Part shown: positions 307 through 43,000 of the stretch, piece by piece | Layout: each line of letters opens with the position of its first letter | How positions within the stretch are numbered: position 1 is the stretch's first letter | Source of the DNA: Phallusia mammillata | Taxonomy: Eukaryota | Assembly (NCBI GenBank): GCA_965637545.1 | Contig: OZ281498.1 | Coordinates: 4,526,001 to 4,590,000, forward strand | Length of the DNA stretch: 64,000 nucleotides | Direction: 5' to 3' | Program-made: the position numbers and the translations under genes | Notes under the pieces: model-generated | The model's database searches: none | Seen by the model: the letters and a program-made list of their open reading frames with translations, nothing else | Told to the model about the DNA's origin: nothing

Positions 307-1119
307 CTTTGTTTATTGCCTCCACGATGTTGGGACGAACAAGACAAACATGCTCTTCGCAATTCAGCTGGTAATAACCGTTGATCACAGATTCGCACGT
401 GCTTTCAAATAAAAAACAAACAAGAATATTTCTGTGCAATTTGTAAAGTTTAAAAACTATTTTATTAGGGGATTTTGTAATGAACTTATTTCAACGTTTA
501 CATACCAGCGATTGCAGTTAACTTTTGTGACGTCGCCAGCTTTAAACGTTTTACCGTTAAAGAAGCATTCACCTGAAAAAATACCGTTACATTTCCACAT
601 ATATGATCTTTATCTTATGACTTGCGATTTACCTGTGTCCAAATGGCTAGTAGTAGTGGTAGTAGTAGAAACAAGACTAGTTACTTCTGCTGTTATAAGG
701 TCTATTGGGGTTGCTGCGGTCGTTATTTTCAAAGTTGGAAGTAAGCAGTAGCTTACATAGTCTGGGCAGCAATCTGAATCAACGTTCCTCTTGCAAAAAC
801 TATCACAGTAACATGTGGTTCCAAAGATCCTCACTGAACAGCTATCGTTTCGCCCCAGACAACACGGCAATTGCCTTCCTGTTCGAGGGAGTAATCTGCT
901 GGAGCAGAACTCCTCGGAACGACGAAATCTGAGCTTTGTATAACTGGCTGTCATTACGTTATGATTTGAAGCCCTTCTTTGATGCAGCAAGTGTAACCAG
1001 CGAACATGTCTTACGGGTTGTTTCTTAACGTTAATGCCGATCCTCTCTGGTGGTAACCCAACAACCAATACGACAAAGCAGCACAAAATCCAGCATGAAA
1101 TCAAAGTCCTCCACGTCAT
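307..1119 (-). CDS. TINAGL1: Tubulointerstitial nephritis antigen-like (TINAGL1/TINAG family) protein, 5' three coding exons; gene continues off the left edge
   Basis: Exons 1119-633, 572-506, 401-307 with GT-AG ends and matching phases. Signal peptide MTWRTLISCWILCCFVVLVVG; somatomedin-B-like CCLGRNDSCSVRIFGTTCYCDSFCKRNVDSDCCPDYVSYC; then ECFFNGKTFKAGDVTKVNCNRCTCE and CEEHVCLVRPNIVEAINKG, matching the TINAG/TINAGL1 N-terminal pattern as I recall it (CYCDxFC...DCCPD; CLVxPxxIxAINxG). Confidence 0.85.
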
Positions 1120-21918: not shown

Positions 21919-24900
21919 TGGTTTACCCCGCGGATGAGTAAAGGAGTAAGCCTTCTTTCCGACTGTGGTCAGGAAATTAGGGAAAAGTCAACTTCGGTGC
22001 AGATTAAAGGATTATGCGGTATTACCTGCGCACGATTTGTGCCACCCACTCCATACAAAAAGCTGCCAGGTGATCGTTTTCCGTTTTAACGTCGGGTCCA
22101 TATTTACAATGGCCCGCATATAGGTTTCCGGCCCGTCGGTCCATACGCTTTTTTTAGTCCTCAAACATTGGTCGAATCGGATTTATTGTCGCAGGACATA
22201 GTTCAAACTTGGTTAGTGGTGGACTATAAATTTTACAATGCGTTAAGTCAAACAGCTGCAATGCAAAGCATATACGACAGTCCAGTAAGGAAAAATGCCA
22301 CCAAAACCATTGGAAATTTGTGTTAGTTTTACCCGCACACGATCTCTCAGAATCATCTATGAAACATTTAAAACTTGCCGCCATTTTTACCCTAAATTGG
22401 AGTTTATTATTGTAACAAATCCAATTAAGTGAAGTCATCTCATTGCGTCAGGAGCTTGTTTGCCGGCAATGGATGTTGCAAGAACAGGATGAGGGCCACA
22501 CGCGGCGCTCTATGACACATCACTATTACGTAGAGCGACGTGCGCGATCACAACGACGTCAGGTGGTCGACATGCACTTTCAAACGAGAAGCGATCAAAG
22601 AGTCAATATTTGATCGGAATAAGCGAGAGACCCGCTCCGGTATGAGAGGAAACATTGAAGAGCGAGACTGGGAAGGGGCTAATGGAGAAACGTGAGTGAG
22701 TGAGCGATTCCACGTGGGGTTTCAAATGCGATAATCTTACAAATGCCGATGTTTTACGTCTCAGCAACAATAGGCGCGAGGCGCACAAAGCACTGGAGCC
22801 AATACGCGGGAATTGAATTGAAACGCCGTGTACACTTTGATATACCGGGCTCCAGTACGCTGGTTCCTGTTCAGGGGGCTCGTGCGCAGAAATTGACAGA
22901 GTCGCTTTTTCTAGCGCTACGGTAAAGTTGGCAGCAATAGGAAGTGGAGAATAGGAGTTTTAACGGCGTGAGACAGGAACCAATTTTATGCAATGCGCTG
23001 CAATTCACATTCAATCGATGACCTGATTCTGAACATGGCTTTTAAGTGCACCTGTTGTTTGGCTTTTGATTGAAGGGAAACCAGAGTTGAACTTATTATG
23101 TGGACTGGTCACTTTTTAAAAACTATTTAAAGCATAAAATGGCAGTGTATACAAGAATTTACAACGCAATAGAATTAAATACCGCAACCGCCAGTTGTAT
23201 ACACAATCATGTTATCTAACACGAAAAGCGACAAGAATTGCAGGTGTTTTAAGTTTGTGTAGTACACGAGTTAAAGGTCACTTTTAACGTTATGACGTCT
23301 CCTTTCATGCGCTGACGTAGTTCAACCGACATATCGCCTTTAAATTGCCCACCGCAAGGTGCGTGCATCGAATTGCAAACGGCGACACATAAACTCCGAA
23401 TTTTTGTTTTCATTTGGCTTTGATCAAGGCCCCAAAGTTGGTGCATTCGATACGGTCTAATCGTCAAACAGTCTATCTGTATTTGAGCTTTAATGCAGCA
23501 GCCAAGTAAAGACCCATGCGAGGGATATAACCACGCGCTGTGAGACTTGCCAATCCGAAAATTAAGTTGCAATGTGCATGCTTTTGTTTTAACTTAGATG
23601 CAGAGCGCAATTTTTAAAAAAATAGCTTTAAAAATATTTGTTGATTTGTAGGAGTACCGAATTGAAAAAGATTTGAAATTGTCGCAAGCCTACGCATAAG
23701 ATGTCGATCGTCCATCAAGCTTATCAAACGCGCGAAGTGTTATTTGTCGTTTATTAGGTCGCAGACATAAACGAGAGTTCTGCGCTAAAGTGTAGCATAA
23801 AGTCGCTTTGTGTTATCACCACGCAAATGCATCAGAAATACTTAGCCTGTCAGCAAGTTGATCCAACACACACGGCCGCATTTGTCGCGTGGTTGACATC
23901 AACTGAAGATACTGTACAAGGAGCAGAAAGACTAAACACCCAATACCCAACAGCGTTCATACTAACGCTAGGGAATATATCCCTGGTCTGATGAATGATC
24001 GAAATGCATGGCGGATTTGAGATGTGGAGTCCCTGCCAAGACTTTGCACGAAGTAATAGGATTATAGTGTTGCCTCATCGTTAGCGCGCGATAGCGTTAA
24101 TTCGATTGTCGCACCCTGGAGAGAAGGTAGATGAGGTCCTGTATGCTGAGATCTGATGACGACTTGGTTTCTCCAACCGTGCCCTTGCACCTCGTAGGTT
24201 CAGTATCTTGCTTTGTGGAAGACAGTTATGATCTCGGACATGTATAGGTGCGGTTCTTTCTCTTTTAAATACGCTTGTGAGCCGCATGGTTAATGAATAA
24301 GCTACGACGTTCCACTATTAATCGCTGTGTACACAATTGTCGGCAAACAGTGCTTTGTCTTTAGGTTAGCACTACGCCACAGGGGAGATTTAGACAGTAT
24401 AACAGAATTCGTTGACTGTTTGCGTTGAATTGGTTTGACATTTCGACGACTGTCTGGCAACTCACCAAGCCCCTAGAAACCGCCAGATAAAGCGTTGTTA
24501 GTTTGAGGGGGTTGCGTCTGAAGCAAGCAAAATGAGCACACAGAAATTGACAAAGCATACATCGTATCTATGCAAAGAGAATCGGAACGACGGAATGTCA
24601 GGCCGATTAATCAGCCAGTTAGTTTCGCCAGACCGGGTCTTAGAGCACACGGAGTATTGTAGCTTATTTTAGTAGACAGCTTTATTTTTATGATACAAAA
24701 ACATATACTTTGCTTTTAGGAATGTCCTGAATGTTTTAATCTTAGCTATATTGCATTGGCCAGAATTTTATGGGCAATTGCATGAGTTAAGCAACAGAGA
24801 TCGACGCCTCCTCGGGAAAGTGATGATGTACGCGCGCCGTGAGCTGGCGACTCCCGCATCTGCGAACATTGCGGGGCCGTGCAATTCTTGCAAGAGGTGC

Positions 24901-25038
24901 CGTTGCGTCACAGACAAGTGTTTCCAGCATTCCGGGTCTCTCCGACACATTGCACTTTCAAAGACTGCCGTTCATTTGTCATCGATAAGGACTCGCCGGC
25001 TTGCATTAGGCAAAAGACTTGTCCTACCCGAGACGGGA

Positions 25039-28000
25039 ATGCTACGAGCAAGACTTTACGATGGATTAACATTGTCGAGATGGAGAGTGTTCGTCTTCTG
25101 CATCGTCATTCTCCTCTCGCTTCTCGTTGGCTTTAGTTCTGCCCAGGAAAATTTAGATGCAAGGCAACTTACGCCTGATTTTCGTGGCACAAGAGGTAAG
25201 TGTAAATATGTGTTAAGTTATGTTGCAAAAAAAAAATGAACCGTGTTAATATTACTGTACTTCATTATTGGCTCTCTGTTTCACAATCAAACACGTCGGC
25301 ATCTCAAACACATCTGTGTTTCGTTTGATTTGGCACACAAACACTTGTTTGAATTACATAATCGGGAACAAGTCGGCAAATCACACATTGAATTGAATCC
25401 TTAAAACAACAAATCCGCGTCGGGCTGCGATGTTTTCCTGCCAACGTGGATTCGTCAACCGGCATTCCAACATGCCTGCCACTTAGTGACGTCGTAATAC
25501 GATATCCTCAACCGCTGCCTATAATACGATCTTGAAAGCAACACTTCTGTAATCTCCGCTCTGTGGGGACAGATCTTTACTATATTTATGAGCGGTGGTG
25601 GCCGGGGTTAGGGTTTCACATAGGAACTCTCCAGACCACGTTCTGTTGCCCCAGTGCTGGCATTACGTCAGTTCGATTAGTTAACGCTCGCGCGAGCCTT
25701 TGGTTGCGATTTCCACAGTCTTGTTGTGTCCAAATAAGTTTTGTCCGGCCCCGTTGATCGCACATTGACAAAGGAAGGGTCGTTTATCCCGAAACTTTCT
25801 CGCACGCTCCCGTTTCATCTCGCTTTGTTCGGTCAACCCTTGATGTTTTTACATGTCGGTCTTCAATTGCCAGTGCGCAATCCGACAACGGGAGCGTTTG
25901 TGGTGAAAGCACAACTGAAGCGTTTTGGGGCAGACGATCACTAGAAAAATTCCCGCCCACCTAAACAACCCGAACAGCGCGCAGTTGCTTTAATCTGATG
26001 CGATTCACAACATGCTTGGTGGATTTACAACTTGTGCTACGAATGCAAAGATATGTGACACCGAATGTGACAGGGTGGAAAACATATAAGCTGTACATCC
26101 AATTCTAGAAATCAAGCATAGGTATAAACGTTTTGTAGCATCGTACAAAAATTTGGTATTAAAAATAGTCAACCAATTTGCACTCCCTGCCCAAACGTAC
26201 ATAAATCCGGTTTCCATCGGTTTTTGTTGTTGTTGAATCAATGTGCATTAATATGTGTAGAAAACGTTCGGTAATTTTAATAAAAGCTCGAATAAGACGA
26301 GTAACACCTTAGCCAGGCATTCTCATTTGATGTATTATGAGGTGTTGTCGCTTCCTGCGCACATAAAGGGGCCCCGGATTACAAATGAAAACATCTGTTC
26401 GGTTAATCTGGTTATTTATAACGAGACGGCATGTGAACCGAAAATCTACTCGAAAGTCGACTTTCATGTGGTCATGGTAACTGATTGTGTATGGGGGGCG
26501 CTGGAGGGGAGCAAAGTCGCAGAAATAATACCGACTCACCCGAGCATCTGCAAGCCGAACCTAATTCCGATGCCTTACAATCACAACTGGGCGATTGCCT
26601 TTATGGGGTCGACTTTTCAATGCTTTGGGGAGCCGAACCGGATCGTCACGTCATTGATTGTCCTTTTGAACTTTGAAGTCAAGTGCGTCGATAACGACAT
26701 TTAGATGGTCGATTGTGACGCCAAATGGGCCTCATCAGATCAAGACAGTGACTAAATGATCGCGTCATTCGGGTAGACATTTCCAATCGTAGCGGGGCTG
26801 ATAAAACTTGTCAAATGTTTCACGACGAGTCTCTGATTGCCACTAGACGGTGCCGATTGCGCGGGCAAAGGGCTTGGGAAAAAATTGCCGACATATCTTG
26901 CGTTTGAAGCGACAAAATTGTCCGGCTCGCGTTACGGATAATCGCTGCCACGAAACAATGATCGGTAAGGCGAGAGGCTTTGTAGGAGGTTGTTTGATCT
27001 CAAACCGCCAGAAGCCATATATTTCACATTGACACGAAGCCATGCCGTAATCATTTAAATCTTTACCGCGATAATTTGTTACACCATATGCAAATACGTA
27101 TTTATCCAAACGCATAGAAATTCTACTGTAAACTGTTTTTAAAGCTAAACATAGCTATCGCGGTAACGTGTATCCAAACCTATCTGTGTGGATACATTGT
27201 GGTCGCAACCGCTCGACCTGCGTGGTAAGGAATGCCCAGCAACTCGCCACAAGAAAACAAATCGTATGACGTTGGTACACAAATCTGACCCGACTTCAAA
27301 ACACCGTCTGAAGCGGAGACAACACAATCACGCCAATAGGTGCCATCTTGCATTACCTCAACTTTCCCACCCCCTGGTTTCCTAGCTCGAAGACTTAATT
27401 GTCGCAAACTTAACATGTCGTGGCAACAAGAGTGGTAAGAGGCTAGGTTAAGTCAACAAAAGGCTTAGGTCGTGTTGCCACAAGCAGATTCAATGTTGCA
27501 ACACTCTCCGTAAACCCCGATGTCACGGCGGGCATCCGGTCGTAGTTTGCTTAGTGATAAAATGCGCAACAAGGTACACATTCAGCGCATCAGTCAAAAT
27601 TTCAAAAAAAGAACATAATCTCACCACTTTGGTAATCCTGAATTTACTCAACCCAAAATCAAAGGCCCCGCGTCATTAACCGCGTGCAATTGCTAGGATG
27701 GCGATTATGCCTAACGGCCACAAATAGCTTTGCAACTACACGCAGCAGTTTGATCCGATCTTGTGCGGCCAGAATTTGTTCATCTGATAAGAGTCTGATC
27801 AAACGGGTCGACTCGTTGGCAAGCGGAATATATGCCAGGGCAATTTTCGAATTTCGGCGCCGGGAAAGATTACCCCGCAAGAGGTGACCTTAAGTAAACA
27901 TTGCTATCGGCCCCTCGCTTGAACAGAAATTTTCCCAATTGAAAGCATGGTTCAACTCATAGGATAAGAGTTGATTTTACCAATACAGCGGATAGTGTTT

Positions 28001-31000
28001 CAAATGACCGATTCAAAAGCGCACTGTAAACTTTTGCTTATAAATCAGCAAATCTGTGTCGCCTGGAATGCGGATCAAAACAGTTTGTTGTCATTGTCAA
28101 GATGTAGGGACACCGATTGTGTGGCAATCGGGTTTCGATGCTTTGAAAGGTTTAGCGCTTTAGCGACGTATATAGTCTTGTGTTGCTTTTTGCCTCGCGT
28201 TATACCTTTGTTTGAAACTCCGAAACGTTCCAGTATAAACCTGATCGGCAATAGCTTTGACAAATTTCAACGCAACTTGAATCACTTTTATGACAAGGAG
28301 GACTCGTTACGGAGTTGCGACTTACTTCATTGTACTCTTTGCGGTTTTGTAGCAATAGACGTGAGATATATTGCGCGTCTGATATTAAACTCCCATTCAA
28401 GTCGTAATCCTGGCAACACGGGCAATTCTAAACAAACAGTGTCCAATATCGGTATGTATGTTGGCATTACGTAATGCGATTAGTGAATATTTGTCCTGTA
28501 ATTGGCGGTGGCGGTGCAAAGGAATGTTTTAACCCCATGTTAAAGGCAGTCGCGTGTGAACGTGGAGCAAGCACGTTATTCATGGCACCATATACGTTAA
28601 CCTGATAATTATGATATATTATCACGGGTAGGTTTTCAACGGCTAGATTCTTTGACTGCCAAAACTTCAATAAATCGAGATAATCCAGTCACATATTTTA
28701 CTGTATTAGGTGAGCTGGGAAACGACATTGCAAAATAATTTACACAACAGTCCTTGAGCTTGTTTGGCTATATCCGTTTTTTGTTAATCCGGTAATATAC
28801 AATACTCTTGATATTTAAATTAATGGGCATTGGAAAAACAAACTAAGACAACACAACTAAGTTTCCGTCAGGCTTAAAAGCATATAGACCTAATACCTAT
28901 CTCATTCAGTAATTCACTTTGAAAACAAGGATTTATTGTTTTGTACTTTTTCTTACGATGGTTGATTAACCCACATGAAAAGGGTGACCTTGCGCAGCAC
29001 AGGAAGTGGCAACAAGTGTGTTTTGGGGGTTTAGGGATTATCGTTGGGGCGTCCGCTCCGCCTAGCCGCATTTCCATGTCCAGACGAACAGCTTCTTCGC
29101 ATGTCCTCACGTCTTTCAACACTCGACTGGCAGTGAAACAAAATCGGCTTTAAATGAAACCGACGCCGTGACGTTACAAGGCCGCAAAAATCATTTGCCG
29201 TTTCCGCTTGTCCTTAATGCCGCCGTCGTTGGCCTGGCCTTGCACGCTCGCCGTACACACGTACACACATGCACAGACACGCAGTGAGAAATAAAGGACA
29301 TACGCCGGGCTGAAGGCGTTACGGCGATTCCCATGGCGTTGACCGCATTGACAAATGCGCGCGTCGCGTTCAAGTGGTCGTGGCGCTTGCTAACTGCCTC
29401 ATTATCGTCTACCTGAAATCAGCTAATCACTACCCGGTGTAGCTTTATGACTGTATTGGATGTTTTGGTCGCGCGCGCAAGTAAGGCAGATCGGAGTGCG
29501 TCATACGCGCGCCTTCCTGAAGCTTGTGTGAAGCAGTTGAAGTGCGGGCATGGCCTAATACCAGTTCCCCGCTTCCTGCGCCATGATCCCGCCACTCGGC
29601 AGAAGGAAACCGGAGTCACAAAAAGAAAGTGGGACTTTTTGAACATCCATCCCATGCAATTTTAGCAAGTGTGTTATACGTATTGACTCTCGTACACATA
29701 AGCAGTTTGCACCAAAATCCTTAGGGTACGTTCAGTGCATCCTATCGTCAGCTGTGTGTTACCAGATGAAGGGAGGGTGGTGTACAGTTCGCGGCTCGGA
29801 ACTGATGATCCCACCGGGAATTGCTTCCTATTAAGCTCGTTTAAATGTAACAGTTAAGTTGGATGTGCAGCTCGACCTTCGCTTTTCGGCGGAGGCGGAA
29901 ATTGGCCTGACACCACTGATGTATGGCATATCCTTTCTGGCGAATGAGATCATCGTTAAATTGGAATTCGCGATGCGGGCGCTAATGGCTTCTTGTCCAT
30001 TAACGAAGCGGGAACGAAGCGCAGCACACTCCTATAAACCTCAGAATGTGCCAAAACTGATAACACTACAAACAGAAAGAATTACTAGACGATAATAATG
30101 CTGTGAATTCTTTTTTTGCAAACCTAACTCTATCGTTGAAAAATCAGTCAAAAAGAATTTAACTTGAGTACACGACCATAAATTTGTATGCTGTGGCAGT
30201 AAAAATATTTAAAATTTTTACTACTACATAGAAACAAACCGTGCCAAAAAGCACAGAGAATGACGTTATGTCTCCTGGTGTCGACAAACAGCAATGACGT
30301 AACGACTCCTTGCACGAGAAATCCGAAATAGTTTCCCATGGCCCGCTAACACCTGAGGTTCAGTAAACTGAAATAGTCGATTAGTGCCCGGCCGACCAGC
30401 ATTCCAAGCCGATCCATTAGCATTGGGCGCGTCTCGTCCGGGGGTTGGGGGGTGAGAGGGTGGATTGGGGGACCCGGGGGCGAGGGGTCGGATCTGTCAT
30501 GGACGCAATGCTCCCGATCGCCCTGCCATGGCAACGAAAATCCGTGACACATCAACACAGAATCGATTCAAGTCTTTTAAGGTCTTTTTAGGGAAACAAT
30601 GGCGGGAATCGCAAACAAATGTTTGTGCATAATTTTATTGATATAATTATCCCCTTCCCTCTACTTGTGTCACATAAATATATTGTAGAAGATAGACGCA
30701 ATAAGTCATAGTCTCGACAACATCGGCCCACGTTCAGCAGGTTGATGAACTTTGATACATTTTGGAATTGGTTTACCAGAGCTCTTTTCACTGTGACTAT
30801 CGGACACGGCCAATTACCGCTAGTGACGGGATCACCTCAGTCGCACGCTGCCGCTCACGCCATGCCAGCTTGAAAGACAGGCAAAAGACTGACGCGCGCG
30901 TCCTTTCTTCTGACGTAGCGATGCGAACGAGACGACAGACGTTGGGGAAAATGTCGAGCCTAATATTTTGCGCTGCAAAAACAACGATGACCAGGCATGG

Positions 31001-34000
31001 GTGCACGCACTGTGTTCAAAGATAAACCAATCTCCTGACATATACGGCGCGGGGGGCAGGTGGCCTGGATATTAAATGCGACAAATTAAAGGCTGTTGAC
31101 TTTGCACGGAAATCCTAGCAGACGTGCCATCCTTACGTGTGGAAGACTTTCACGCGGGACGGTCTACTTCTCCGACCAACTCCCCAAGTCGCTTTCCCAT
31201 TCTGCGGGCTATGTTGGAAGAGAACGGGGGCCGAGGAAAGGGGTGCGGGTAGTCTGGGGCTGTTTCCTTCCTGTCTTGGAATAGGATTTGATATCTTCAC
31301 CCATCGCCACATTAACAAAGGGGCCGTTGACACACGACCGACTCGATTGATGCAAAACCTTTAATGAGGAAGCGCTAAGGCCCAGGGGACCCTCAAAAGC
31401 CTCGCAGGGGACATGAAGGGCACACCAGAGGCGGGGAAATTCGGTGCAACAGCAAATTATTTTACGATCAGCATTCCGCCGGAAAATTATTACGATATCT
31501 TTCGATTGCTTTGAACGTTGCGAGACATTTAAAGGATTTACGAGAATTTTACTCGAAACAAATTAGCAACATTTAGCTCTCGAGTGCTGGAGTCCTATGG
31601 CGTTGAGCGGCGAAATAATAACACGGCAGGTGGCAGTTTAAGACAAGATTACGAGCAATAATCCCGTATAATAGGAGGCAATCAACCGGCGTTGGCCAGA
31701 CAAGCACTCACGGCCGACAAGGATGTTCTCCCATTCAATGTATGTCATAACAGTGCGTTGCCTTTTTGGAAACCTCCAATTAGATTTGGAGACTACAACA
31801 CAAAGCGTCGAAAGCATGTTGTTGCGGGTGCCCCGGGATCGGCACCAATTAGCTCCATTGTACGGCCAATCCTTTATGCAAGGCCGGCAAATTAAATTGC
31901 GGAAATCAGTCGTTTGAAATCATGGCCTTCCCAAAAAGCATTATCTTTATTTATACAAAGGGGGAAATAGTGTAGTTTTAGTCAAAGTGTATGTGAAATA
32001 ACCAGAGTTGTTTTCAGTTAGTGCCGCAACAGGACCATATGTTTTTGTGAAGTATACCATGGTTTCGTGACAGCTATTAAACGATCAGACGCTTATAAAT
32101 AATGTATACAGGTATGAATAACATAGAAGAGTAGCCGTGCGTAAAGCCCTTTCAATTGGCAAGTTGACATTGGCCAAGTAATGTGTGCTTTGTTATTCGT
32201 ATAGAATAAGATGAGGTCGCGGCGGAGTGTTGGAATGTGGCTTAATGAATACATATCGTTTGATGTCCGTGTTTCCAAAGTTACAGCGCCGACCATGGGT
32301 CGAAAGACGTAGGTGTTGGCGGAATCATTATGCAGGTGCGCCGGCGAACTTTTTTGCGTTTGGTGCTCAATGACGGCGGTTATGGGTAAGTGATTACACA
32401 AAAGCGTGGGTACGGGATACTAATACATCTGCGCTCGAACGCCAGCGCTGCAGATAAATCTGGGTAAACCACAATGTTTGCGAAGATAAACAGATCACCC
32501 GTTAAAACAGGTGCTATAACTACAGTTGAGTAGCCGCGCGAAGGATGCGTTAATCTCACATTACACACTGTCAGAAGATGTGGGATTTGAAATGGCGTTT
32601 CTCAGTAGACGGTTTGATAGTTCACAGTGGTTGAAATTCGTGCAAACATCGGTGCACCGCAAGACTATGGAGTAAGTCATTGATAGGACAACGCCGGCGT
32701 CGACTCATGACACTATCACAGAGAAGTTTACGTGACAAACGATATATACACAAGGTGCGCCTACAACTTCTGTATACACCTATGGCATGTGATTCCAAAC
32801 CGACGCAAAGTCAACAAAGTACAGGTTTTCTCCAAAAAATGCGTGGTCCGGCCCAATCCGTTTTTTGGCGTCGCGACATCAATCGAATCAGGATTATGTG
32901 CGACGCGCATACTACAGCGAAGAGTCCGTTTCTTTTATCGGTGAAACGCCTCCTTACTTGTCGAAAATATTGTTACACTGTTAATATCGAGTGACACTTG
33001 AAGCTCACTTCACATGTTAGAGTGTTGGCGAACTTTTAGCTCGAGCACAGACGGGAGCTGGACAGCGATAATAGGCCAGCTGCCAATCTGGAGTGCATCG
33101 TCTCTAGGCCAGGCTGTAGTTGCGATTTTTCCAACGTTTTCCCAGGAATTTAGCCCACAAAAACGCAAATATATGAAAAAATAGACAGAAAAGGGTAAAA
33201 TTTTTGTGAGTGACAAATCCCAATGACCCTGTGTATAAAAAAGTATATGAGATAGACCATAAGACGTCAGTATTTATTTTCAACTTTGAGGCAGAGTAAA
33301 GCGCTTTGTCACATGTGCTTATATCTGAATTGTTGCGGGCACGAGCAACTGCAGAGTGGAAGTGATATTTTGACCGTACATACAATCACTTGGCTTCGAC
33401 CGACTACTTATCGTGTCGCATTACCGCAACAATACTCTGGTCTTTTCACTGCGTTACAAGAGATCTTGTGTTGCACGACTCGTGTCAACTACATCTGGAA
33501 AGTGCGAGTCACGGTCAAAGGCTTTGTGTCCCACGCTAAATTGCCCTTAATGCAAGCGAGGGGCCACAGTTGACGTACCGCGAATGGGTAAACGGGAACC
33601 TATTGAAGACGCCGCCATCATGAGAGTTTCAGATATTTAAGCGATTCAAGTGTTTGCAAAGATAAAAACTGACGATAATTTTCCCCTACCATCTTTGTTT
33701 GTGTAATTGTGTACATTTAGTTAATTTAGTCCAAGCGCCAAACCGTGTTGCAAACACCTCGTAATAACCGGTTTCTGCTGCGTATATATAGACTGGCGCT
33801 AAAGGTGTGCCCGATAATACAAACCCAATACACGCACGTTTCGTAAAGTCAGGACGTAAAATTTCATAGCGACACACTTTCACAACGCCTACTGTGGCGC
33901 ATAGGTGTACTGAAAACAGCTGATCGGCCTTATCCGCATGGCCTTAATACTACGACAGTTTAAGGAAGGCGACATCATCCCCCGCACAAATCCAATATGG

Positions 34001-37000
34001 ATCAAGGCGCTGCAGCCATCAGCGCTGTTGGGCTTCACGGTCAGTGGTCGCATAAGGCGTGATGGGTAGATCAGGAAGCGTCAGGCTGGAAATGGTAAAG
34101 TTGAGCGACAGGAATTACGAACCAGATCACACAGCAGGCAAATGTAATTATTTTCCGTAAGTAGTGACAGTTTTTTTTGGATCCCGCGCTTTCCGTTCAG
34201 TGATAGACAGTGGGGGCGGGAAAGCGTATTACGCTAGTCTGTTCCTAAAACAGAGTTGTCAAAGATACAGCTGTGCCTACACACTTTTATGGCAAAGTTT
34301 AATAACAGCGCAGTATTGCGGGCTAGCAGGTCCCGAAGTTTGATTTAGAGTTCAGCCGGAAAAGCTGCAGTATTTTTCCGCGGACGACAAGCAGATTGTG
34401 CCAATGTCGCATCGCCGTCAAAAACACTTCGATAAACGGGAATATCGGTTCGAGCTAAGTAGCGCATAAGCGATTTGTTGCGGTCGTATATTTGAAGTCT
34501 AGACAAATACAATGTAATAATGGTTTCTGTGGCGTATAAATTTCGATATGGGTCGCGACTTCATTGATCTGTGGGTGCAGAAATATCAGCCCTGCATGAA
34601 GTGCGCAGCGCTGCACATTGTTTTGTGGTAATCGGCGCTTTGTCGCGGATAAGGACCGTTAAACCGCGATGATGCGTTCGGCGCGTCTTAGATTTGCGAG
34701 TAAAGTGATAATTTCATGGAAACATGACCTCCAGACCCGTGACCACAAGGAAAACAGCACTGGCGCTCAGCGTGTGGCTTATTGGCGAAGCAAAAGCCCC
34801 TACACAAATAACGACGCGCCGCTGTGAATCATAATTTCTCTCATGCTGGCTGTCAGTTTCGATAATGCGACAGGCGCCGGCGAAATCTAATAAGCACAAA
34901 ATAACTATCTTGTTAACAAAAGACCAACTTCGTGTTGCTGTGATTTTGTGTATCAACCCTGTAGTAATTGCTGTACGCGGTTTTTAAATATGCAAGGGTC
35001 CATACAGTATTCTGCGTTCTGCAGTGTATAATTTCAACCCATTGGTATTTGGTATGATTAGTCGAGTTTTAAACTATAACTGGTGTTTCGGTTGAGAACA
35101 TGTTGCGATGTTCAGCAACATTTTCGAACGAAATCTATTGTTGGGCGTTTCCGTTCGGGCGACGTGTTGTCTGGCGCATCGTTTTCATATGCGCCATCTT
35201 TCTGTTGATCTTGGCCAGAGTTGTCTTTTCATACTGATTGAAATGGAAACTATGTGCTTTGGATACTAATCCGAATCTAATTCTTAGAAAACAGCACACT
35301 CCAAACAGCTTGGTTTTCTTCACAAAGTTTCTGCTTAGGACCGATTACGCCCTATACCCGGAAAAGTTAGAGTTTTGCGCTTTTCTCACGCTAAAATTGC
35401 GGTTTGTCAAGTGTTGACAAGTCGACTTTGTGGCACATTAGTCGTCAAGCGAGCCGAATATTCGAGAAACCCTTTTTTCGAAATGAGGTCAAGATAGTTG
35501 TTGTTGTATGTGGGTTCAGTGGCTTAACCTGGGTTTATTTGTAATCTGAACATAGTTCAAAACTGACCTAGAAATCATTATACACACTCTGCCAGGTGTA
35601 GGTTTTAGTCAAAAGTGGGAAATGCTGATGTAAATGTAGTTGTTGGTGGGCGAAAATCATGCGGTGCGATGAACGTTTCCAATGTCGTCCCCCGCGAACA
35701 ACAGACGACTTGACCAAGAGACAATCTAAACTGAGGAAACGGACACTTGGGTCGCGTACTGTGCGACACCTTTCACAACATGTTGGCGATGATGGGCCAA
35801 CTCAAAGAAACGACTCCGCGTTTCCTTTTATGTCGGAAGCGATCTACCAACGCCTACAAACGGCGAGCGACAAAGGACTCGACTCTACGCCTGGACTTGA
35901 ATTTAGGGTGCACTTGCAAGATGAAAGTGTTCCTTTGATTAGATACATTCACTCAAAACTGACATGCTCTGTAAGACACGCAAAGAATAATTGTGGCACA
36001 CAATTAAATAAACGTACGATATGTTTTCACGAGAACAATTCCAAAGGACACGACAGACAAGTGCTCCCCACATTCTGTGTACCAAGAACAGAACATAGCA
36101 ACTTGAATGAAATACGTCTTAGGGTGAAGTTAAAACAACAACGTAAATCGGGCGTTGGTAATTGCCACAAAGCCCTTGGACTAATTGTCATGTTATTTCT
36201 ACCGATGTTTCACTTCGCGGAAGCCTCTCATCTTTCCTATGGTCGAAGGTTGCGCAGGTGGCACCGGTTACCTCGTTATACCCCAATGCCACATGACTTG
36301 GCGCAGCCGGTTGTAACACCACCTGAAGGAGTTACACTTTCGAATAAAAGTAAGTCTCCCTGCACGCATGCAGAACGCCCGATTTTCTAATAATGTTATC
36401 ACTGATGATAAAGCAGCGCCACAATCTGACATTTGACAAGCTTTAGCAAGTTCGCAAGCATGGCCGTTTTCCAACACTTATCGTTCCTTGCGACCACCAT
36501 GAGAAGTATTAGGTGCGATTATGCGAAAAACCCAAACAAACTGTCAATAGGTGGTCATAAGCAAAACCGCCTGTATTGCTCTTACTTGCGGGAGGATGTT
36601 TTCCTCGCGGTGTTAAAACCCAGCGACCCGAAAAAAACACAAACACTGATTGACTCGGGAATGCGCCTAATGGTTTTTTGGGCCAGGGGGAAACTAAATG
36701 TATGTTTTGCGAATATTATGTTCGCGACTTTGGACGTGATTTCCACAGAAAACCAATGGTTTCCTTGCTTGCATGTCGGGAAAGCTAAACACAATAATTG
36801 ACACTGTTCACATTTTCCAATGCTGTCTGCCACTGTTCCACGACAGGTAGGCCTTTATTTAAAGGTCAACCACCACACAAAGCATCCATTGTCGAGATCA
36901 AACACAAATCAACAAAATCTACATTTGCTGTTACGACACGACACCCGCATATTAAAACACAAAATTGCTCTCTTTTTACAAGAATTGTGACAAAGTTTAT

Positions 37001-40000
37001 AGCGCAGGGCTGTGATATAACACCTTAAAACTATTTTTAGGGCTTTATCCATCCGTCGTAAATCTGGCAAGCCAGGCTACAATAAGTTCTAACGCAACGT
37101 GCGGGTTGCGAGGTTCAGAGAAATATTGCAAATTGGTGGAACACGTGGATCGACGGACCTTGCGAAGTCAGCAATGTTCGGTAAGAGGCTCACCCAGGCC
37201 TTGAGAATCTTGACCTTAGCTACACTTTTCCTTTGCAGTGTTTGCTGCAGTTACCGATTTAAAAGAGTAGTGTTGATATTCTTTGACAATTTTTGTTATG
37301 CGTTTGAAGATTGTTTTAAAAACATACGGTGAATTTTTGACCTCCTTTCGCTAAAAATGTATCTTTTTAGCTTGCGAGTAAAAATGTATGTAATAATTTT
37401 GGCTTTTCTCGTTCGCAGATGTGCGATGCAAGCAGTCGAGTGAACCAGCATCCCATCGAGTACGCAATCGACGGATACGGGGGACGATGGTGGCAGAGTC
37501 CCACTATCGACCAAGGTTACCAAAACCATTACGTCACCATAACGTTGGACTTGAAGCAAGTAAGTGCGTGCGGCGACTTCCTTTCGTCGACCTGTCAATA
37601 CGGACTATAGGAATTGTTTGCTGTAGTCTTGTTCCCACAGGCTAATCCCGCCAGGGGAAATGAGCGCATTTTTGCCTTTCGTGCCGTGCGAAATAACGCG
37701 TTACTTTCAGGGGCGACGCGATAAGCCTATCTGTTGACATTGCAACGTATTTTTGCTGCTGTGGCCGAGCGAGGGGCGGGTAAAGCGCACAATGGCTACC
37801 GCGACACGCTAAGGCACAAGCGCCCGTCGGAAATACCGACTTTTCAAACCCAGTGGGGTCGCGTATAACAATGGACCAACAGTCGTTTGAAGGTGGGGCA
37901 CTTGAGCGGGGTAATTCAATCGCGGGGAAAGTGTCTATGTTTGGGACTTTGCAAACGTTTGAACTCACGCCTCGCAGGCCCGACCCTAACGATCAGTTTT
38001 TTTCGGCAAATATCACATCGAGGGTGGAGTCGGGCATATTTTTCGTGTTCTTAATCATTCCGTGAGAGCCATTGTTGCAAAAGTCGAAGCCTCGAATCGC
38101 AAAGGTTAACTGGGAAATCGGTACGTGTTTCCCACGGTGTGGTTAGTTCTAACAAAATAGTATTACAATTTACGCAAATGTTTTAACCTGTAAGTTAGTT
38201 AACAAATGCAAAATATCATGATCATTAAACATGTTCATCACAGCGCTTATGTAAAGGTGTGTAAAACCAAAAGAAATCACATGACGTAATGGCAAACGAA
38301 AGTGATTACATGGCAACAAGTTACGACCCAAGGGTCAAAATCCTTACGGTTAGGCCGTGTCGGGTTGCGGGTTGGTGGTGTGTTGTTGTGGCAACCTCGC
38401 GATTCTTTACAAGTGACAATATGGGAGAGGTAACAAGCTACTATTGCGAGCTTCGCTACTGCATGATTGCCTGCATCACAAATGCCCTTTACTGAAAGCG
38501 TCTGAAGGCAATTGCTTCACACGTCAGACTATTCCCATGGCAATACTGATTAGGATAAGAATTTAACGCGTACAGTAGGCTCACTGGTTAGTAAAAACGG
38601 GGCAACAATATTTTGTTAGGGAAGCGTTTAAGGCTGACAAGTTTACGAAGCAACCGCAGATTTTTACCAGCAGGACAAACTTTTGGGGGCGTTTTGCCCA
38701 TTGAATTGAGTGTTTTAGATAATCCATGGACATTTATTCCATTAAAACTAGATTACAGCGATGCTTAATTAAAATTGATGGTTTATGGCACTATCGCGTT
38801 TACCGATACAGGACAAAATGTAAAAAAACGTGGCGCTTTTATTTAAATGGACCGTAATCATGGCTGACTTCGGCGCGCTAGGTAAACAAACATAGCAATC
38901 AAAGAATTCAGCGATTCGGTCTTAGTACGGAAATTGGTTTATTACGCAATGGCACAAGGTCGAAAGTTTGAAAAATTTACATTCCGGCAAATCTACAAAA
39001 CGAGCAGTTTTAACAGATCAAAGAATTAAACGCGTATGGGGCAAATTTTGAATAGGCGTGTCCTTATCACGTCATAAAAACAACTTCGATCAAAGGGTTT
39101 TAGCTCAAAATGGTAAATTGTTTTGATGGAGATTTGCCGAAAATTGCCCATATAGCAAGCCCAATTTTCACTGTAATCCGCCGAAGATTGGTTGCTTATA
39201 GCTCTGTGCTTTCGAGGCTTTAAAGTTGCGAAATAAGCCATTAGCAACGACCGACTGAGGCGTCCAATGCACAGTAATTGCAGAGATGACTATTCGCGCG
39301 ATGTTGTGGGTAAGGTTCTAAACTCGGCAAAGGACATCCGGTTGCTCGGAACGCAGCATCCATATTTAGCAAGACTCTGCGTCTAGTTAGCTCGAGTCAT
39401 AGCTTTCCTCTTTAACGCAAAGCTGTTTATCCCATCAACGTCTGAACAAACTCAATTTTCAATTACTACGCCTTCCGAGCCCGTAATGTCCTCGGTGTTC
39501 TCACGCACGCTTCTTCACGGCATTGCTCTTGCCATTTGCACGCGCTGAGATATACGTGTGCCTCACGCGAGGTTTGTTTTATGAACTCAATTAGAGATTG
39601 CAGTTCGTCGGATCGCTGGCGTTTCTTTGTCGATTTGGTTGCTGAAATGTAACGATTTGAGTTATTTTTTGCCTCGAAATAAGCTGTGGCAATATCCCGT
39701 TCGACCCGCTTAAATACTTTTAAGGTTTGCGCCGATTTGTCAACTTGCTGCCTCATGCGTCATCCACGCGCTTGCGGGTGACAAACGCACGCGAACATTT
39801 GGTCTCTTGGGACAAAAACAACACGCAGGATCAAAACCCTGCACCAAATATAACGTAGGGCGCTTTTGTGCCACCTAGGCGAAATAACAGCACCACAAAA
39901 CTTCGCTGCAGCGAATTTTATAAGCGCAATGCGCTTGTGGTCTTTCGCATCAAACACAGCAAAGTGGTCTCCGCCTTCAGTGTAACCCAACCCTTGATTG

Positions 40001-43000
40001 CAGCCACAAATCGGGGTTTGATTTCACCGTACGATTGCGCGCCGTTGCTTTTGATCGCATGTACCGTCGCGGTGCCAACGAAGGGCGGGGGCCGTTTACT
40101 TTCCACGACGAGTTTACACAACAATCACTCGCGCGCTTACTGTTTAGGCACGACATCACACAACAAGGTGCATTACGTCATTCCGATTTGAAGGCCCGTT
40201 TCGGTTTTCCCGTGAATAGACGAAAAATGTTTCCAGGCTCTTGTCTAAAACAGGCACGGTCCTGGCAGGATCAGAAAGCAGTCGCCAAATTTCCTGTCTG
40301 CGTTCGCCGTAAACAACACTCTGTATAGTTGGACATCATCGCCATTGCTACTTTTTCGTGCTGAATCATTCTTTCTGCTCAATTAAGGTTCACTTGGTTT
40401 AGGAGCCATATAACAACAAATGCGCGGTTCATATATCTCCAGATCGGGCGTGGTTTCGTTGTCTGGGCAAAAACATATATATTATGGTTCAGGTGACAGC
40501 CCGACACCATTAAACTCATAATCTTGCCATCGCAAAACTAAACTTGGTCGAGTATCCGTTCTACACGCGATAGAATCTGCGCCAAATCGCCGCTAATCTA
40601 TTGAATCCCCGCCCTTTGATAACGACCGCGAGACTGTCGTTAGTCTGGTATAGGTCAAGTCACGTGATCGGGCAACAGCTGCGTCAGTTCGGGGTCTGAC
40701 ATTTGGTGACACGGCGAACAATTTCCCTACCTGCAGTGACAAGAATATGTGGCCTCGCAACCGCAGGAAATAAGAAATAATTTTCCTCTCTTCGAAGGTC
40801 TTTCAAGTCGCCTATGTGATCGTGAAAGCGGCCAACGCCCCGCGCCCAGGCAACTGGATTCTCGAAAAATCAATCGACGGAATCAAATGGTTTCCGTGGC
40901 AATATTTTGCTACCTCCGATAGGTAATTATCCACGCATTTTTCCAACGTGACTGACCGGTTTGCTTCGGCGTTGGACGCGCGCCATTGCCAAATTAAGTC
41001 ACACACGGCGTGTTGTGACATTTTGCAAGAAATCTTTTTTGTTCACAGAGAATGCGTGCAAGTTTATGGAACAAGAGCAGCGGGACGAGGCCCGCCGAGA
41101 TATACCTCCGACACAGAGGTCATATGTACCTCGTACTTCTCGAAAATTATCCCGCTGCAAAATGGCGAGGTACGGCAAATCTTACAGTGACCACTGATTA
41201 GCGGGTAATACGACTAACACATGCTTTAGATTCATGTATCACTAATCAACGGTCGACCAAGTGCAGAAAACCCATCCAAAGACCTCATGGAGTTTACGTC
41301 AGCTCGTCACATTCGTTTAAGATTGCAAAAAATTCGAACGCTGTATGGTGACCTAATGGCAATCAGCCAGTTTTCGGCACACTACCAAGACCCGTCCGTC
41401 ACAAGAAGAGTAAGTTGTTTCTACATTTAGCACGACCACCAACGTAAAGTCTTTAAATAGATTTTATATCAAGGTTTAACCTTAAATCAGTTCCAATGGA
41501 CAAAGGCAGTTCAGTTGTCGCCTAATAATTATGTGAAGTTTAACTTTTAAACGTCATCTATAGCACAGAAACATGTATTTTAATGACGGAAATGTTATAG
41601 GTGGCGTAACATAACAGGGCGTACAGCGTAAAATGGACCTCACATTAATAGTCATGCCCGTGCAACCCATAAATGGTAGTCATGGAGCCATGATGTGGTG
41701 GCAGCGAAATCAAATGGCCTTCGCGTAATTTTCCCAGCAACCAGCGTTGCGATGTTTTTGCCATTTCAAGGGACGATTCGCTTCTAAACAGGTCGGCGAG
41801 TAGAAAGTGACTTGATACAATTTGTCTGGCCGCGATTCGAGGCGCGCATTTCGTTTAAGGAGAGCACGCTGATTTGTTGACGTTTGGGATTGGGTTTTAT
41901 GGACTCATGTCCCGTGTCCACGCCTATTTGATTGACTAAACGCGTAAAGGCGAGAAGGCGTCAACTGATCTGGCGGTCCCCTTTTTGTTCCTTAGATGCG
42001 AGACAGTTGGGTGAGTTGAAAAGGTTAAATGGCAGTGAAAGGTAACCACATTGCGACGTTAACGAAATCGCTGTAAGGTTACAAAAACGAAATTTGACGA
42101 TTTGTTTTAACGCCATTGTGGAAAGAAAAAAAGGCGTTTAGTTTTTTTCTGGTTCCTGAACCATTAATTTCATCCGTAAACTTTCGTTTGACACATAAAA
42201 AATAAATTAACTTTAAATTTAATACCCTAATCTCCAGCAGTTTTTAATATTGTACAATGATAAACATTTGCCGACGACCAGTAATCTCTTCATATCAGAG
42301 ACGATATCAAACTGTGAAGCGTCCGTACTGAAAGACCGCCGCAATTTTGTGTGCCAGATTTATCGTTATTGTTGCCAGCATACAACAGGATTTGTGAGAT
42401 GTTTACTTAGAGCCGCAACGTATTGCACAAAGTGGTCTTGTGAGGAGGATCGCATTTCGTCCACAATTCAACATCACTCGGGCATTTTTTTCATGAGTCA
42501 GACGCAGGAAAATTGGTACTCGAGAAACGAGCAAAGTGGCAGACGTTCGGCTGTTGTTGGCCGAATATTTGGATGTCTTTTCATCTCAATCCGCTCTACC
42601 TCAGAGGGGAAGGGCTGTGTAATGGGAAAGGGCGACGTTGCGGCTCGAACAGTGACATTTGCGTAACGGTTCAAGAGAAGTTGTCAGTTTCACCAGTTTA
42701 AAAACATTATCCAAAGAGTCAGGAAGCAGAAAGCTAAAATTGTGAACGAGTAGAGTGAAAGGATTAATATAGTACCGAACTGCTGTAGATTTTGTAGAAT
42801 AAGTTTTTTTTTCTTTTCAAAGAAAGCAGATTTTTTTAGTTTGCCACGAACTAAAACACATTTTTTTCTGTATTTGTTTAGATTGTGCTGCAAAAAAAGA
42901 GCTTTCAGATTTGCTGCAAAAACGAGCAATTTTGCATGTAGTCTATCAATGAAAAATATTGTGCAAGGGTCAAGAATTTGTTTTGAACTTTTTGAGAAAT

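What the first reader, a model, noticed from the sequence alone, without database searches (positions are those of the whole stretch)
24751..37180. Array of alternative laminin alpha first exons converging on exon 2
Seen: the three longest plus-strand ORFs on the track (24751-25239, 27971-28474, 35659-36390) each contain a hydrophobic signal-like stretch. Each also has a good donor (GTAAGT 25196, GTATGT 28452, GTAAGT 36350) 7-14 codons before its stop, and all three donors are phase 1, the phase required by exon 2 (37041). Known: variable first exons on a constant body occur in protocadherin and UGT1 clusters, and LAMA3 uses two promoters; I know of no multi-first-exon array ahead of an intact LN domain. 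Inference: the 11.8-kb first intron is a promoter/first-exon cassette producing alpha chains with different, unusually long N-termini. This is the best candidate for an undescribed system in the window.
Basis: partly seen in the sequence, partly recalled or inferred. Interest (0 to 1): 0.85.

Follow-up and report, generated by a model that had tools for sequence, protein, structure and literature searches.

The report
Laminin alpha gene: second, long first exon
In this sea-squirt laminin alpha gene, one of the three proposed alternative first exons (35598-36349) is a real spliced 5' exon carrying a 230-codon in-frame ORF with no known relatives; the classical signal-peptide exon is only inferred and the middle candidate has no support, so this is at most a two-start gene and not an exon array.

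Summary
The sequence facts hold. All three ORFs, their hydrophobic stretches and their phase-1 donors sit where stated, and exon 2 (37041-37180) accepts phase 1.

**E1b (35598-36349) is real.**
- RNA-type contigs of four runs from one study begin at 35598-35602 and run to 36349.
- They join 36349>37041 (GT..AG), then exon 2>3>4. No other 5' exon joins exon 2 in these runs.
- ATG 35659 opens 230 codons up to the donor, in frame with the LN domain (chance about 1e-5 to 1e-6).
- The peptide has no homologue, paralogue, Pfam domain or confident fold. It is basic, with one signal-like hydrophobic stretch (aa 172-189, ...AEA) followed by RLRR.

**ORF2 (28004-28451) is unsupported.** Only DNA runs hold it, and its length is within chance.

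**E1a (25039-25195) is inferred only.** It encodes a textbook signal peptide, but I could not test its expression.

**Verdict.** This is a laminin alpha1/2-like gene with probably two alternative 5' exons, not a protocadherin/UGT1-like array. The proximal exon adds a lineage-restricted long N-terminus. Two points stay open: whether E1b starts at its own promoter or at an SL trans-splice acceptor (CAG at 35593-35595), and whether the extension is conserved. The same reader had already noted E1b on this window (s1-403067); the scan has no note of it on other DNA.

The parts
25039..25195 (+). E1a: inferred distal first coding exon. It encodes [35 protein letters not shown]|QENL..., a classical signal peptide, and has a phase-1 GTAAGT donor. 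The junction codon G|GG gives Gly before [10 protein letters not shown].
   Evidence: Sequence read. KD15 of 3.19 is in the top 1.3% of ORFs in the window. No transcript evidence could be obtained.
24823..25038 (+). In-frame open stretch upstream of the E1a signal-peptide ATG, with ATGs at 24823 and 24826. If the transcript starts upstream of 24823, E1a would also carry a 72-aa extension. No ATG in any frame lies between 24827 and 25038.
   Evidence: 0 stops in frame against 8 and 3 in the other two frames over 24694-25038. The transcription start is unknown.
28004..28451 (+). It is unsupported and most likely a chance intronic ORF.
   Evidence: Only DNA runs X5 and X6 hold it (share 0.78). 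RNA-like runs hold 0.00 of its words. It is single copy with no paralogue and has no Pfam match. An ORF of this length is within chance.
35598..36349 (+). E1b: transcribed proximal 5' exon of 752 nt as assembled, spliced to exon 2.
   Evidence: contigs of X1-X4 start at 35598-35602, run to 36349 and join 36349>37041 (GT..AG) with no unaligned 5' letters. The DNA is single copy in the genome.
35593..35595 (+). CAG immediately upstream of the contig starts. It is a possible SL trans-splice (or cis) acceptor for E1b; the alternative is a transcription start some tens of nt upstream.
   Evidence: Sequence. The genome carries more than 4,600 copies of the 16-nt ascidian spliced leader plus GT, against 19 for the control. 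Whether this acceptor is used was not tested.
35622..35639 (+). Three overlapping mini-uORFs (ATGCTGATGTAA, ATGTAA, ATGTAG) in the 61-nt leader ahead of the main ATG.
35659..36349 (+). E1b coding part: ATG (context AAAATCATGC) followed by 230 codons open to the donor, phase 1. The junction codon A|GG gives Arg before [10 protein letters not shown].
   Evidence: 0 stops in frame against 11 and 17 in the other frames. P(open) is 2e-6 to 1.7e-5.
36172..36225 (+). The only hydrophobic segment of the E1b peptide, aa 172-189 ([18 protein letters not shown]). It reads as a signal or signal-anchor core with an A-x-A end.
   Evidence: GRAVY 1.82. The AF2 single-sequence model puts a helix at 167-201, at low confidence.
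36247..36258 (+). RLRR (aa 197-200), the only R-x-[KR]-R motif in the peptide, just after the hydrophobic segment. It is furin-like by pattern only.
37041..37180 (+). Exon 2, the start of the LN domain, with a phase-1 acceptor.
   Evidence: It is conserved in a related ascidian contig, with third-position-biased substitutions of 5:8:23.
37419..37559 (+). Exon 3, LN domain (...[13 protein letters not shown]...).
   Evidence: The best solved relatives are laminin alpha-1 (E 1.9e-10) and alpha-5. Substitutions by codon position are 5:4:18.
40798..40923 (+). Start of exon 4, LN domain continued ([11 protein letters not shown]...).
   Evidence: The loose end of the RNA contigs maps to 40800. Laminin_N match.

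Best explanation
This is the 5' end of a laminin alpha1/2-like gene of an ascidian. The gene probably has two alternative 5' coding exons that both splice in phase 1 to the first LN-domain exon at 37041.

- **Distal exon E1a (25039-25195).** It encodes an ordinary cleavable signal peptide. This is inferred from sequence only.
- **Proximal exon E1b (35598-36349).** It lies only 691 nt upstream of exon 2 and is shown to be the 5' end of spliced mRNAs. It is the only 5' exon assembled in the one public study that expresses the gene. From ATG 35659 it carries a 230-codon ORF continuous with the LN domain.

Inferred mechanism for E1b, none of it shown. The ORF is translated. The basic, probably disordered first ~171 residues stay on the cytosolic side. 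The single hydrophobic segment (aa 172-189) targets the chain to the ER as an internal signal or signal-anchor. The laminin body is then either freed by cleavage (after AEA or at RLRR) or kept tethered to the membrane.

The middle ORF (28004-28451) is a chance intronic ORF, so there is no multi-exon array.
For: **E1b is a spliced 5' exon.**: contigs of runs X1-X4 start at 35598-35602 and carry the joints 36349>37041 and 37180>37419 (both GT..AG), plus a loose end that maps to exon 4 at 40800. No other sequence is attached in front of 37041; these runs hold 0.43-0.47 of the words of 35659-37183, which is the exonic share. DNA runs hold 0.91-0.92.

**The ORF is not chance.**: 230 codons are open from an ATG 61 nt into the contig up to the donor, with 0 stops against 11 and 17 in the other frames (P about 2e-6 to 1.7e-5). 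It is the longest open frame in the window.

**Peptide features.**: the junction codon is in frame and there is one signal-like hydrophobic stretch near the exon's 3' end, as in E1a.

**E1a.**: E1a has a top-1.3% hydrophobic stretch, an SSA|Q cleavage-type site and a phase-1 GTAAGT donor.

**ORF2.**: it is absent from all RNA-like runs.

**Gene identity.**: Laminin_N, laminin EGF, Laminin B and LG domains lie on the same strand, and the best solved match is laminin alpha-1.
Against: - The E1b peptide has no homologue in 1.84 billion representatives or in the 5.8-billion-cluster search. It has no paralogue in its own genome and no Pfam domain.
- Its protein-language-model recognition is low and the AF2 model is unconfident (pLDDT 41).
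- Codon usage does not separate it from intronic ORFs. Translation therefore rests on ORF statistics alone.
- Three uATGs precede the main ATG.
- E1a expression was not tested, and the E1a ORF also finds no homologue.
- The RNA evidence is one study, assembled contigs only, and the runs are labelled RNA by guess. The three removed GT..AG introns argue for cDNA.
- Contigs cannot show rare isoforms, a transcription start, or the absence of E1a or ORF2 use in other tissues.
Confidence: 0.55

Rival explanations
1. One reading: a cassette of three or more promoter/first-exon units (E1a, ORF2, E1b), each used in some tissue or stage, as in protocadherin or UGT1A clusters.
For: All three ORFs share the rare combination of a hydrophobic stretch and a strong phase-1 donor. 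Only 5 of 240 ORFs in the window have it. One of the two non-canonical candidates proved real. Contigs cannot exclude rare or tissue-specific use of ORF2.
Against: ORF2 shows 0.00 of its words in all RNA-like runs, including study P1, which expresses the gene. A 168-codon ORF is expected by chance. The candidate exons share no similarity, so they are not a paralogous variable-exon family. ORF2 has no homologue or paralogue.
Confidence: 0.08
2. E1b is the gene's only real 5' coding exon. The signal-peptide-like ORF at 25039-25195 is a coincidence, or belongs to rare or obsolete transcripts. Every alpha chain from this gene would then start with the 230-residue pre-sequence.
For: In all four runs the contig runs unbranched from E1b into exon 2, with no second sequence attached at 37041. 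There is no transcript or homology evidence for E1a. E1a lies 11.8 kb away.
Against: E1a combines a top-1.3% hydrophobic stretch, a textbook n/h/c signal layout, a GTAAGT donor and the right phase. Such a combination is rare in the window. Logan contigs drop minor variants, and only one study was informative.
Confidence: 0.17
3. E1b transcripts are real but their long ORF is not what matters. They could be unproductive or regulatory isoforms. Alternatively, translation could start at a downstream in-frame ATG (36190 or 36205, inside the hydrophobic stretch) after leaky scanning or re-initiation, giving a short signal peptide.
For: The peptide looks unlike known proteins. Codon usage resembles the intronic background. 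The leader carries three uATGs.
Against: Nothing but selection on the reading frame explains 177 stop-free codons upstream of ATG 36190 (about 2e-4 at the intron's stop frequency). More than ten out-of-frame ATGs lie between 35659 and 36190, which makes leaky scanning implausible. [12 protein letters not shown] is very short for a signal peptide.
Confidence: 0.15
4. E1b is not a promoter-proximal first exon. It is an internal acceptor (CAG at 35593-35595) that receives the 16-nt spliced leader, so two mRNA 5' ends could come from a single upstream promoter through competition between cis-splicing (E1a>exon 2) and SL trans-splicing. This concerns how the 5' end is made and is compatible with the best explanation's coding claim.
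For: The genome has more than 4,600 SL+GT copies, including 553-nt tandem arrays, against 19 control matches, so the species trans-splices. A CAG with a pyrimidine-rich run lies 2-6 nt upstream of all four contig starts. Contigs at depth 5-11 normally stop some 20 nt short of a true 5' end (my estimate), which fits SL plus 2-6 nt.
Against: No contig carries any SL letter (record_from is 1). An AG within 6 nt upstream is expected about one time in three by chance.
Confidence: 0.35

Closest known systems
Alternative-promoter laminin alpha genes, e.g. vertebrate LAMA3 (alpha3A / alpha3B); from general knowledge, not tested here
   Same: One laminin alpha gene gives mRNAs with different 5' exons and different N-termini.
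   Different: In LAMA3 the internal promoter yields a truncated chain lacking the LN domain. Here both 5' exons join the first LN exon, so the LN domain stays intact. The difference lies upstream of it: 230 orphan residues against a plain signal peptide.
Variable-first-exon arrays (clustered protocadherins, UGT1A); general knowledge
   Same: Upstream exons converge on a common exon 2 in a fixed phase.
   Different: Those arrays have many paralogous variable exons, each with its own promoter. Here at most two exons are credible, they are unrelated in sequence, and the third candidate has no RNA support.
Type II membrane-anchored matrix proteins shed by furin (collagens XIII/XVII/XXIII/XXV, gliomedin, ectodysplasin); general knowledge
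   Same: The layout predicted for the E1b isoform is similar: a basic N-terminal region, one hydrophobic segment, then an R-x-R-R motif ahead of the matrix-protein body.
   Different: No homology was found. Topology, cleavage and even translation are untested here. No laminin chain of this kind is known to me.
Long or internal signal sequences with extended N-regions (e.g. retroviral Env leader peptides); general knowledge
   Same: The hydrophobic core sits far from the N-terminus and is followed by a small-x-small site, which could act as a cleavable pre-sequence.
   Different: An n-region of 171 residues would be extreme. There is no experimental support.
SL trans-splicing of ascidian mRNAs (16-nt leader ATTCTATTTGAATAAG)
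   Same: The leader is abundant in this genome, and a candidate acceptor sits right at the E1b 5' end.
   Different: No SL letters were seen on the E1b contigs, so use of this acceptor is unproven.

Membership tests
Laminin alpha chain | N-terminal LN domain followed by laminin-type EGF repeats and a Laminin B (domain IV) module on the same strand | tested here: met
   Laminin_N matches fall at window 37046-37207, 37410-37559, 40747-40923 and 41047-41373. EGF_laminin and Laminin_B exons appear. Exon 3 best matches solved laminin alpha-1 and alpha-5 LN domains.
Laminin alpha chain | C-terminal LG (laminin G) domains, which distinguish alpha from beta and gamma chains | tested here: met
   Laminin_G_1 and Laminin_G_2 match at 56175-56603. 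Solved relatives include laminin alpha-1 and alpha-2 LG domains.
Gene with alternative first exons / alternative promoters | Two or more distinct 5' exons, each observed joined to the same downstream exon in transcripts | tested here: inconclusive
   E1b>exon 2 was observed in 4 runs.
Gene with alternative first exons / alternative promoters | Each 5' exon has its own transcription start | not testable with these tools
   Contigs cannot show a start. An SL trans-splice acceptor is an open alternative.
Variable-first-exon array (protocadherin / UGT1A type) | Three or more tandem variable exons that are paralogous to one another | tested here: not met
   BLASTP of E1b against the E1a ORF gives E 0.73 at best. 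ORF2 and E1b have no paralogue anywhere in the genome.
Variable-first-exon array (protocadherin / UGT1A type) | Every variable exon is expressed and spliced to the constant exon | tested here: not met
   ORF2 is held only by DNA runs and shows 0.00 in RNA-like runs.
Type II membrane-anchored, furin-shed matrix protein | N-terminal cytosolic region, a single transmembrane signal-anchor and a luminal R-x-[KR]-R site | tested here: inconclusive
   The sequence pattern is present: aa 1-171 have pI 10, the hydrophobic segment is aa 172-189, and RLRR is at 197-200. However, the 18-residue core with Pro and His and an AEA end looks as much like a cleavable signal. Nothing functional was tested.
Conserved protein-coding exon | Homologues in other species with a coding substitution pattern | tested here: inconclusive
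   No homologue was found. The one related contig retrieved (L009) ends about 370 nt short of the E1b position. The E1a ORF also finds nothing, so the databases cover relatives poorly.

The most novel reading that the evidence does not exclude
The dominant mRNA of this ascidian laminin alpha gene encodes a chain that begins with a lineage-restricted, basic 171-residue cytosolic head and a signal-anchor. The LN domain of a laminin would then be made tethered to the membrane, in type II orientation, and released by cleavage at RLRR or after AEA. That would be a membrane-anchored laminin, analogous to the transmembrane collagens.
Probability: 0.15. Interest if true: 0.75.

Novelty: new variant of a known kind. 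Interest (0 to 1): 0.45.

Why it matters
Laminin alpha chains are thought to enter the secretory pathway through a plain N-terminal signal peptide, and their LN domain drives basement-membrane polymerisation.

Here, the only 5' exon seen in expressed transcripts places 230 unrelated residues in front of an intact LN domain, with the ER-targeting stretch 170 residues in. If this ORF is translated, it points to one of three things: an extreme pre-sequence, a membrane-tethered laminin, or a young de novo coding extension fixed on an ancient matrix gene.

The case is also a clean example of a long 'intronic' ORF in a tunicate genome that turns out to be a real exon. Gene models that keep only the signal-peptide exon would miss it. 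It shows no sign of a new kind of genetic system, and the 'array' reading falls away.

Tried and rejected
**Homology for the E1b peptide (all blank).**
- Pfam gave only sub-threshold noise.
- phmmer against 1.84 billion representatives gave no hits.
- The word-indexed search of 5.8 billion clusters gave none.
- A six-frame search of the own genome found only itself.
- The ESM Atlas feature search gave no usable hit, with recognition 1423.
- The E1a ORF search also gave none. This shows that blanks here partly reflect poor database cover of relatives.

**Other tests of E1b.**
- AlphaFold2 single-sequence fold: pLDDT 41, uninformative.
- Codon-usage log-likelihood, trained on 2,417 codons of own-genome HSP70 and LN exons: E1b scores -0.21 per codon. 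Intronic ORFs score -0.25 +/- 0.10 and true laminin exon ORFs score -0.05 to -0.24. The test has no discriminating power and was rejected.
- CpG observed/expected across 22-38 kb is about 1 everywhere, with no island at either exon.
- The sigma-70 promoter/terminator scan is irrelevant for a eukaryote and found nothing.

**Cross-species check.** The exon-3 ORF pulled one related ascidian contig (P0001 / L009, Logan DRR090687). It stops about 370 nt 3' of the E1b position, so E1b conservation could not be read.

**Literature.** Nothing was found on ascidian laminin first exons, on laminin alpha alternative first exons with a signal peptide, or on the run accession.

**Rfam.** No match for the whole window at gathering threshold, nor for 37550-38150 at E up to 1.

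**Ideas rejected.**
- E1b as a transposon or repeat: it is single copy.
- E1b as a cassette exon spliced after E1a: the E1a frame would hit TAA after 12 codons, and the contigs carry nothing upstream.
- A processed pseudogene as the source of the spliced contigs: the genome holds only one, unspliced, copy.

Full report
**1. What is in the sequence**

The window is G000:C5:4526001-4590000 of a 240-Mb assembly. A plus-strand laminin gene fills its right half:
- Laminin_N matches at 37046-37207, 37410-37559, 40747-40923 and 41047-41373.
- Laminin EGF, Laminin B and LG exons further on.
- The best solved relatives are laminin alpha-1 and alpha-5 for the LN exon, and alpha-1 and alpha-2 LG domains for the LG exon.

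So it is a laminin alpha chain of the alpha1/2 kind. The genome carries more than 4,600 copies of the 16-nt ascidian spliced leader followed by GT, including 553-nt tandem arrays, against 19 control matches. The organism is therefore an SL-trans-splicing ascidian. Notes by other agents of this scan name Phallusia mammillata; I did not check that name.

**2.

Their stop-to-stop lengths are 181, 168 and 253 codons, and the last is the longest open frame in the window on either strand.
- Two of the listed starts are TTG, from the bacterial table. The usable ATGs are 24823/24826 and 25039, 28004, and 35659.
- The donors GTAAGT (25196), GTATGT (28452) and GTAAGT (36350) are present and all are phase 1.
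- Exon 2 begins at 37041 with GG completing a split codon. It reads (G/R)[21 protein letters not shown]..., the start of an LN domain.
- Each ORF has a hydrophobic 15-mer, with Kyte-Doolittle scores of 3.19, 2.03 and 2.18.
- In a scan of all 240 ATG-ORFs of 40 or more codons in the window, only five combine such a stretch with a strong phase-1 donor.

**3. The decisive test: transcripts**

Four runs of one study (X1-X4, P1) hold 0.43-0.47 of the 31-mers of 35659-37183. Two DNA runs hold 0.91-0.92. I laid the four runs on 32000-37999:
- Their contigs start at 35598, 35602, 35600 and 35598 and run without interruption to 36349.
- They skip 691 nt (GT..AG) to 37041, then skip 37181-37418 (GT..AG) to exon 3.
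- They continue into letters that map to 40800, which is exon 4.
- Nothing else in 32000-35597 or in the introns is covered.
- No second sequence is attached in front of 37041 in any run.

The runs are labelled RNA only by guess. Three precisely removed GT..AG introns, together with a single unspliced genomic copy, leave cDNA as the only sensible reading.

In this study it is the only 5' junction of exon 2 that assembled. Contigs drop minor variants, so this shows dominance in these samples, not exclusivity.

**4. Is E1b coding?**

In favour:
- The first long ATG (35659, context AAAATCATGC) lies 61 nt into the contig. It opens 230 codons that run exactly to the donor and continue in frame into the LN domain through the junction codon A|GG (Arg).
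- The frame has 0 stops against 11 and 17 in the other two frames. The chance of 230 open codons is 2e-6 from the exon's own composition, or 1.7e-5 from the intron's stop frequency.
- That the window's longest open frame coincides with a transcribed exon, starts near its 5' end and leaves it in the required phase is not plausibly chance.

Against:
- Three tiny uORFs (35622-35639) precede the ATG.
- The peptide has no Pfam domain, no hit among 1.84 billion representatives, none in the 5.8-billion-cluster search and no paralogue in its own genome.
- Its language-model recognition is low and the fold is unconfident (pLDDT 41).
- My codon-usage test could not separate even true laminin exons from intronic ORFs, so it says nothing.

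I conclude that the ORF is maintained and very probably translated, and that it is lineage-restricted or fast-evolving. That conclusion rests on ORF statistics, not on conservation.

**5. What the E1b N-terminus looks like**

| Residues | Feature |
|---|---|
| 1-171 | Hydrophilic and basic (pI 10, GRAVY -1.0; 39 K/R against 20 D/E over the whole 230 residues), with a KRQSKLRKR run |
| 172-189 | [18 protein letters not shown], the only hydrophobic segment |
| 190-230 | Basic again (pI 11.4); holds the peptide's only R-x-[KR]-R motif, RLRR at 197-200 |

The hydrophobic stretch lies 41 residues before the exon end. In E1a the stretch ends 18 residues before the exon end. A laminin chain must enter the ER, and this stretch is the only candidate targeting signal in the E1b isoform.

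My inference, not shown, is that it acts as an internal signal. With a 16-18-residue core containing Pro and His and an A-E-A end, it could be cleaved by signal peptidase, which would make residues 1-189 an extreme pre-sequence. It could instead persist as a type II anchor, with later release at RLRR. The motif pattern is there, but nothing functional could be tested.

**6. The other two candidates**

*ORF2.* The stretch 27900-28451 is held only by the DNA runs (share 0.78). All RNA-like runs listed show 0.00, including X2, X16 and X17 of the study that expresses the gene. It is single copy with no relatives. A 168-codon frame is expected about twice per window by chance. Its donor-plus-hydrophobic combination is uncommon, so rare use cannot be excluded, but nothing supports it.

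*E1a.* The peptide [35 protein letters not shown]|QE is a textbook signal peptide. Its GTAAGT donor is in the right phase and gives ...GTRG-LYPS. I regard it as real with about 75-80% confidence. The reads tools were exhausted before I could test it, and its ORF finds no homologue either.

One curiosity: the E1a frame stays open 115 codons upstream of ATG 25039, with 0 stops against 8 and 3 in the other frames. It has in-frame ATGs at 24823 and 24826 and no ATG of any frame between 24827 and 25038. Depending on the unknown start site, E1a might also carry a 72-residue extension.

**7. How the E1b 5' end is made is open**

The four contig starts lie 2-6 nt after a CAG (35593-35595) that follows a pyrimidine-rich run. 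At k-mer depths of 5-11, contigs usually stop some 20 nt short of a true mRNA end (my estimate). That would fit a 16-nt spliced leader joined at 35596 as well as it fits a transcription start near 35560-35580.

No contig carries SL letters, and an AG this close is expected one time in three. In a trans-splicing ascidian, a single upstream promoter with competition between cis-splicing and SL trans-splicing is a live alternative.

**8. Relatives**

The exon-3 ORF retrieved one Logan contig from another ascidian (P0001, 79% identical; L009, 1,273 nt, run DRR090687). It aligns to the window as follows:

| Region | Nucleotide identity | Substitutions by codon position |
|---|---|---|
| Exon 2 | 74% | 5:8:23 |
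| Exon 3 | 81% | 5:4:18 |
| Flanking introns | about 48-58% (essentially randomised) | not applicable |

The phase-1 acceptor of exon 2 is kept. This species would be an ideal test for E1b, but the contig ends at about window 36717, some 370 nt short of E1b. No tool let me walk further.

**9. Comparison with known systems**

Alternative 5' exons are common, and LAMA3 uses two promoters. There, however, the internal one removes the LN domain. Here the LN domain is intact and the variation lies in what precedes it.

The locus fails two defining features of protocadherin/UGT1-type arrays: the exons are not paralogous, and not all candidates are expressed.

The predicted E1b layout resembles furin-shed type II matrix proteins such as the transmembrane collagens, and also very long leader peptides. 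That resemblance is in pattern only and comes from my general knowledge.

**10. Verdict**

| Element | Status |
|---|---|
| E1b (35598-36349) | Real; shown by RNA contigs |
| E1a (25039-25195) | Probable; not shown |
| ORF2 (28004-28451) | Unsupported |

This is a new variant of a known kind: alternative 5' exons, here adding an orphan 230-residue N-terminus to a laminin alpha chain. Interest is moderate. It would rise sharply if the extension is translated and anchors the chain in the membrane.

Noticed in passing
window 37616-37980 (intron 3 of the laminin gene): A ~365-nt intronic element is 83% identical to the related ascidian contig L009. That is more conserved than the flanking coding exons (74% and 81%), while other intron sequence is near random (48-58%). 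Substitutions show no codon periodicity (20:22:18), and it carries frame-breaking indels. The 116-codon minus-strand frame here is not kept in the relative. It has no Rfam match, is single copy, and is not covered by the RNA contigs of X1-X4. It is a candidate enhancer or unknown non-coding RNA.
   Followed up: partly
window 36797-36846: A 50-nt block about 200-240 nt upstream of exon 2 is 78% identical to the related ascidian, within an otherwise unalignable intron (TTGACACTGTTCACAT...TGTCTGCCAC). It may be a regulatory element between E1b and exon 2.
   Followed up: no
G000:C3:11108338-11147465 (outside the window): A tandem array with a 553-nt period carries the exact ascidian spliced leader plus GT. 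These are presumably the SL RNA genes. More than 4,600 SL+GT matches occur genome-wide, many of them dispersed.
   Followed up: no
window 610-1353 (-): A 247-codon open frame, the second longest in the window, has a sub-threshold Somatomedin B match (E 0.0019). It is probably an exon of a neighbouring gene on the minus strand.
   Followed up: no
window 62892-63839: Two long open frames overlap on opposite strands (201 and 194 codons), with weak beta-helix or solenoid-type Pfam hints. The 62-64 kb bin has an AT skew of 0.27, far above the rest of the window. This suggests a repetitive or strand-biased coding stretch.
   Followed up: no
G000:C64:6825-8528 (outside the window): An uninterrupted 604-codon HSP70 frame on a small contig matches the Pfam HSP70 model far more weakly (E 1e-89) than the two single-exon HSP70 genes on C1 and C8. 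It could be an organellar-type or non-host (contaminant) DnaK.
   Followed up: no
window 36074, 36318, 37460: The RNA contigs differ from the assembly at three sites. T>C at 36074 changes Phe139 to Ser in E1b and occurs in 3 of 4 runs. A>G at 36318 is synonymous and occurs in all 4 runs. G>T at 37460 changes Glu to Asp in exon 3. These are probably alleles, and they are too few for any selection test.
   Followed up: partly
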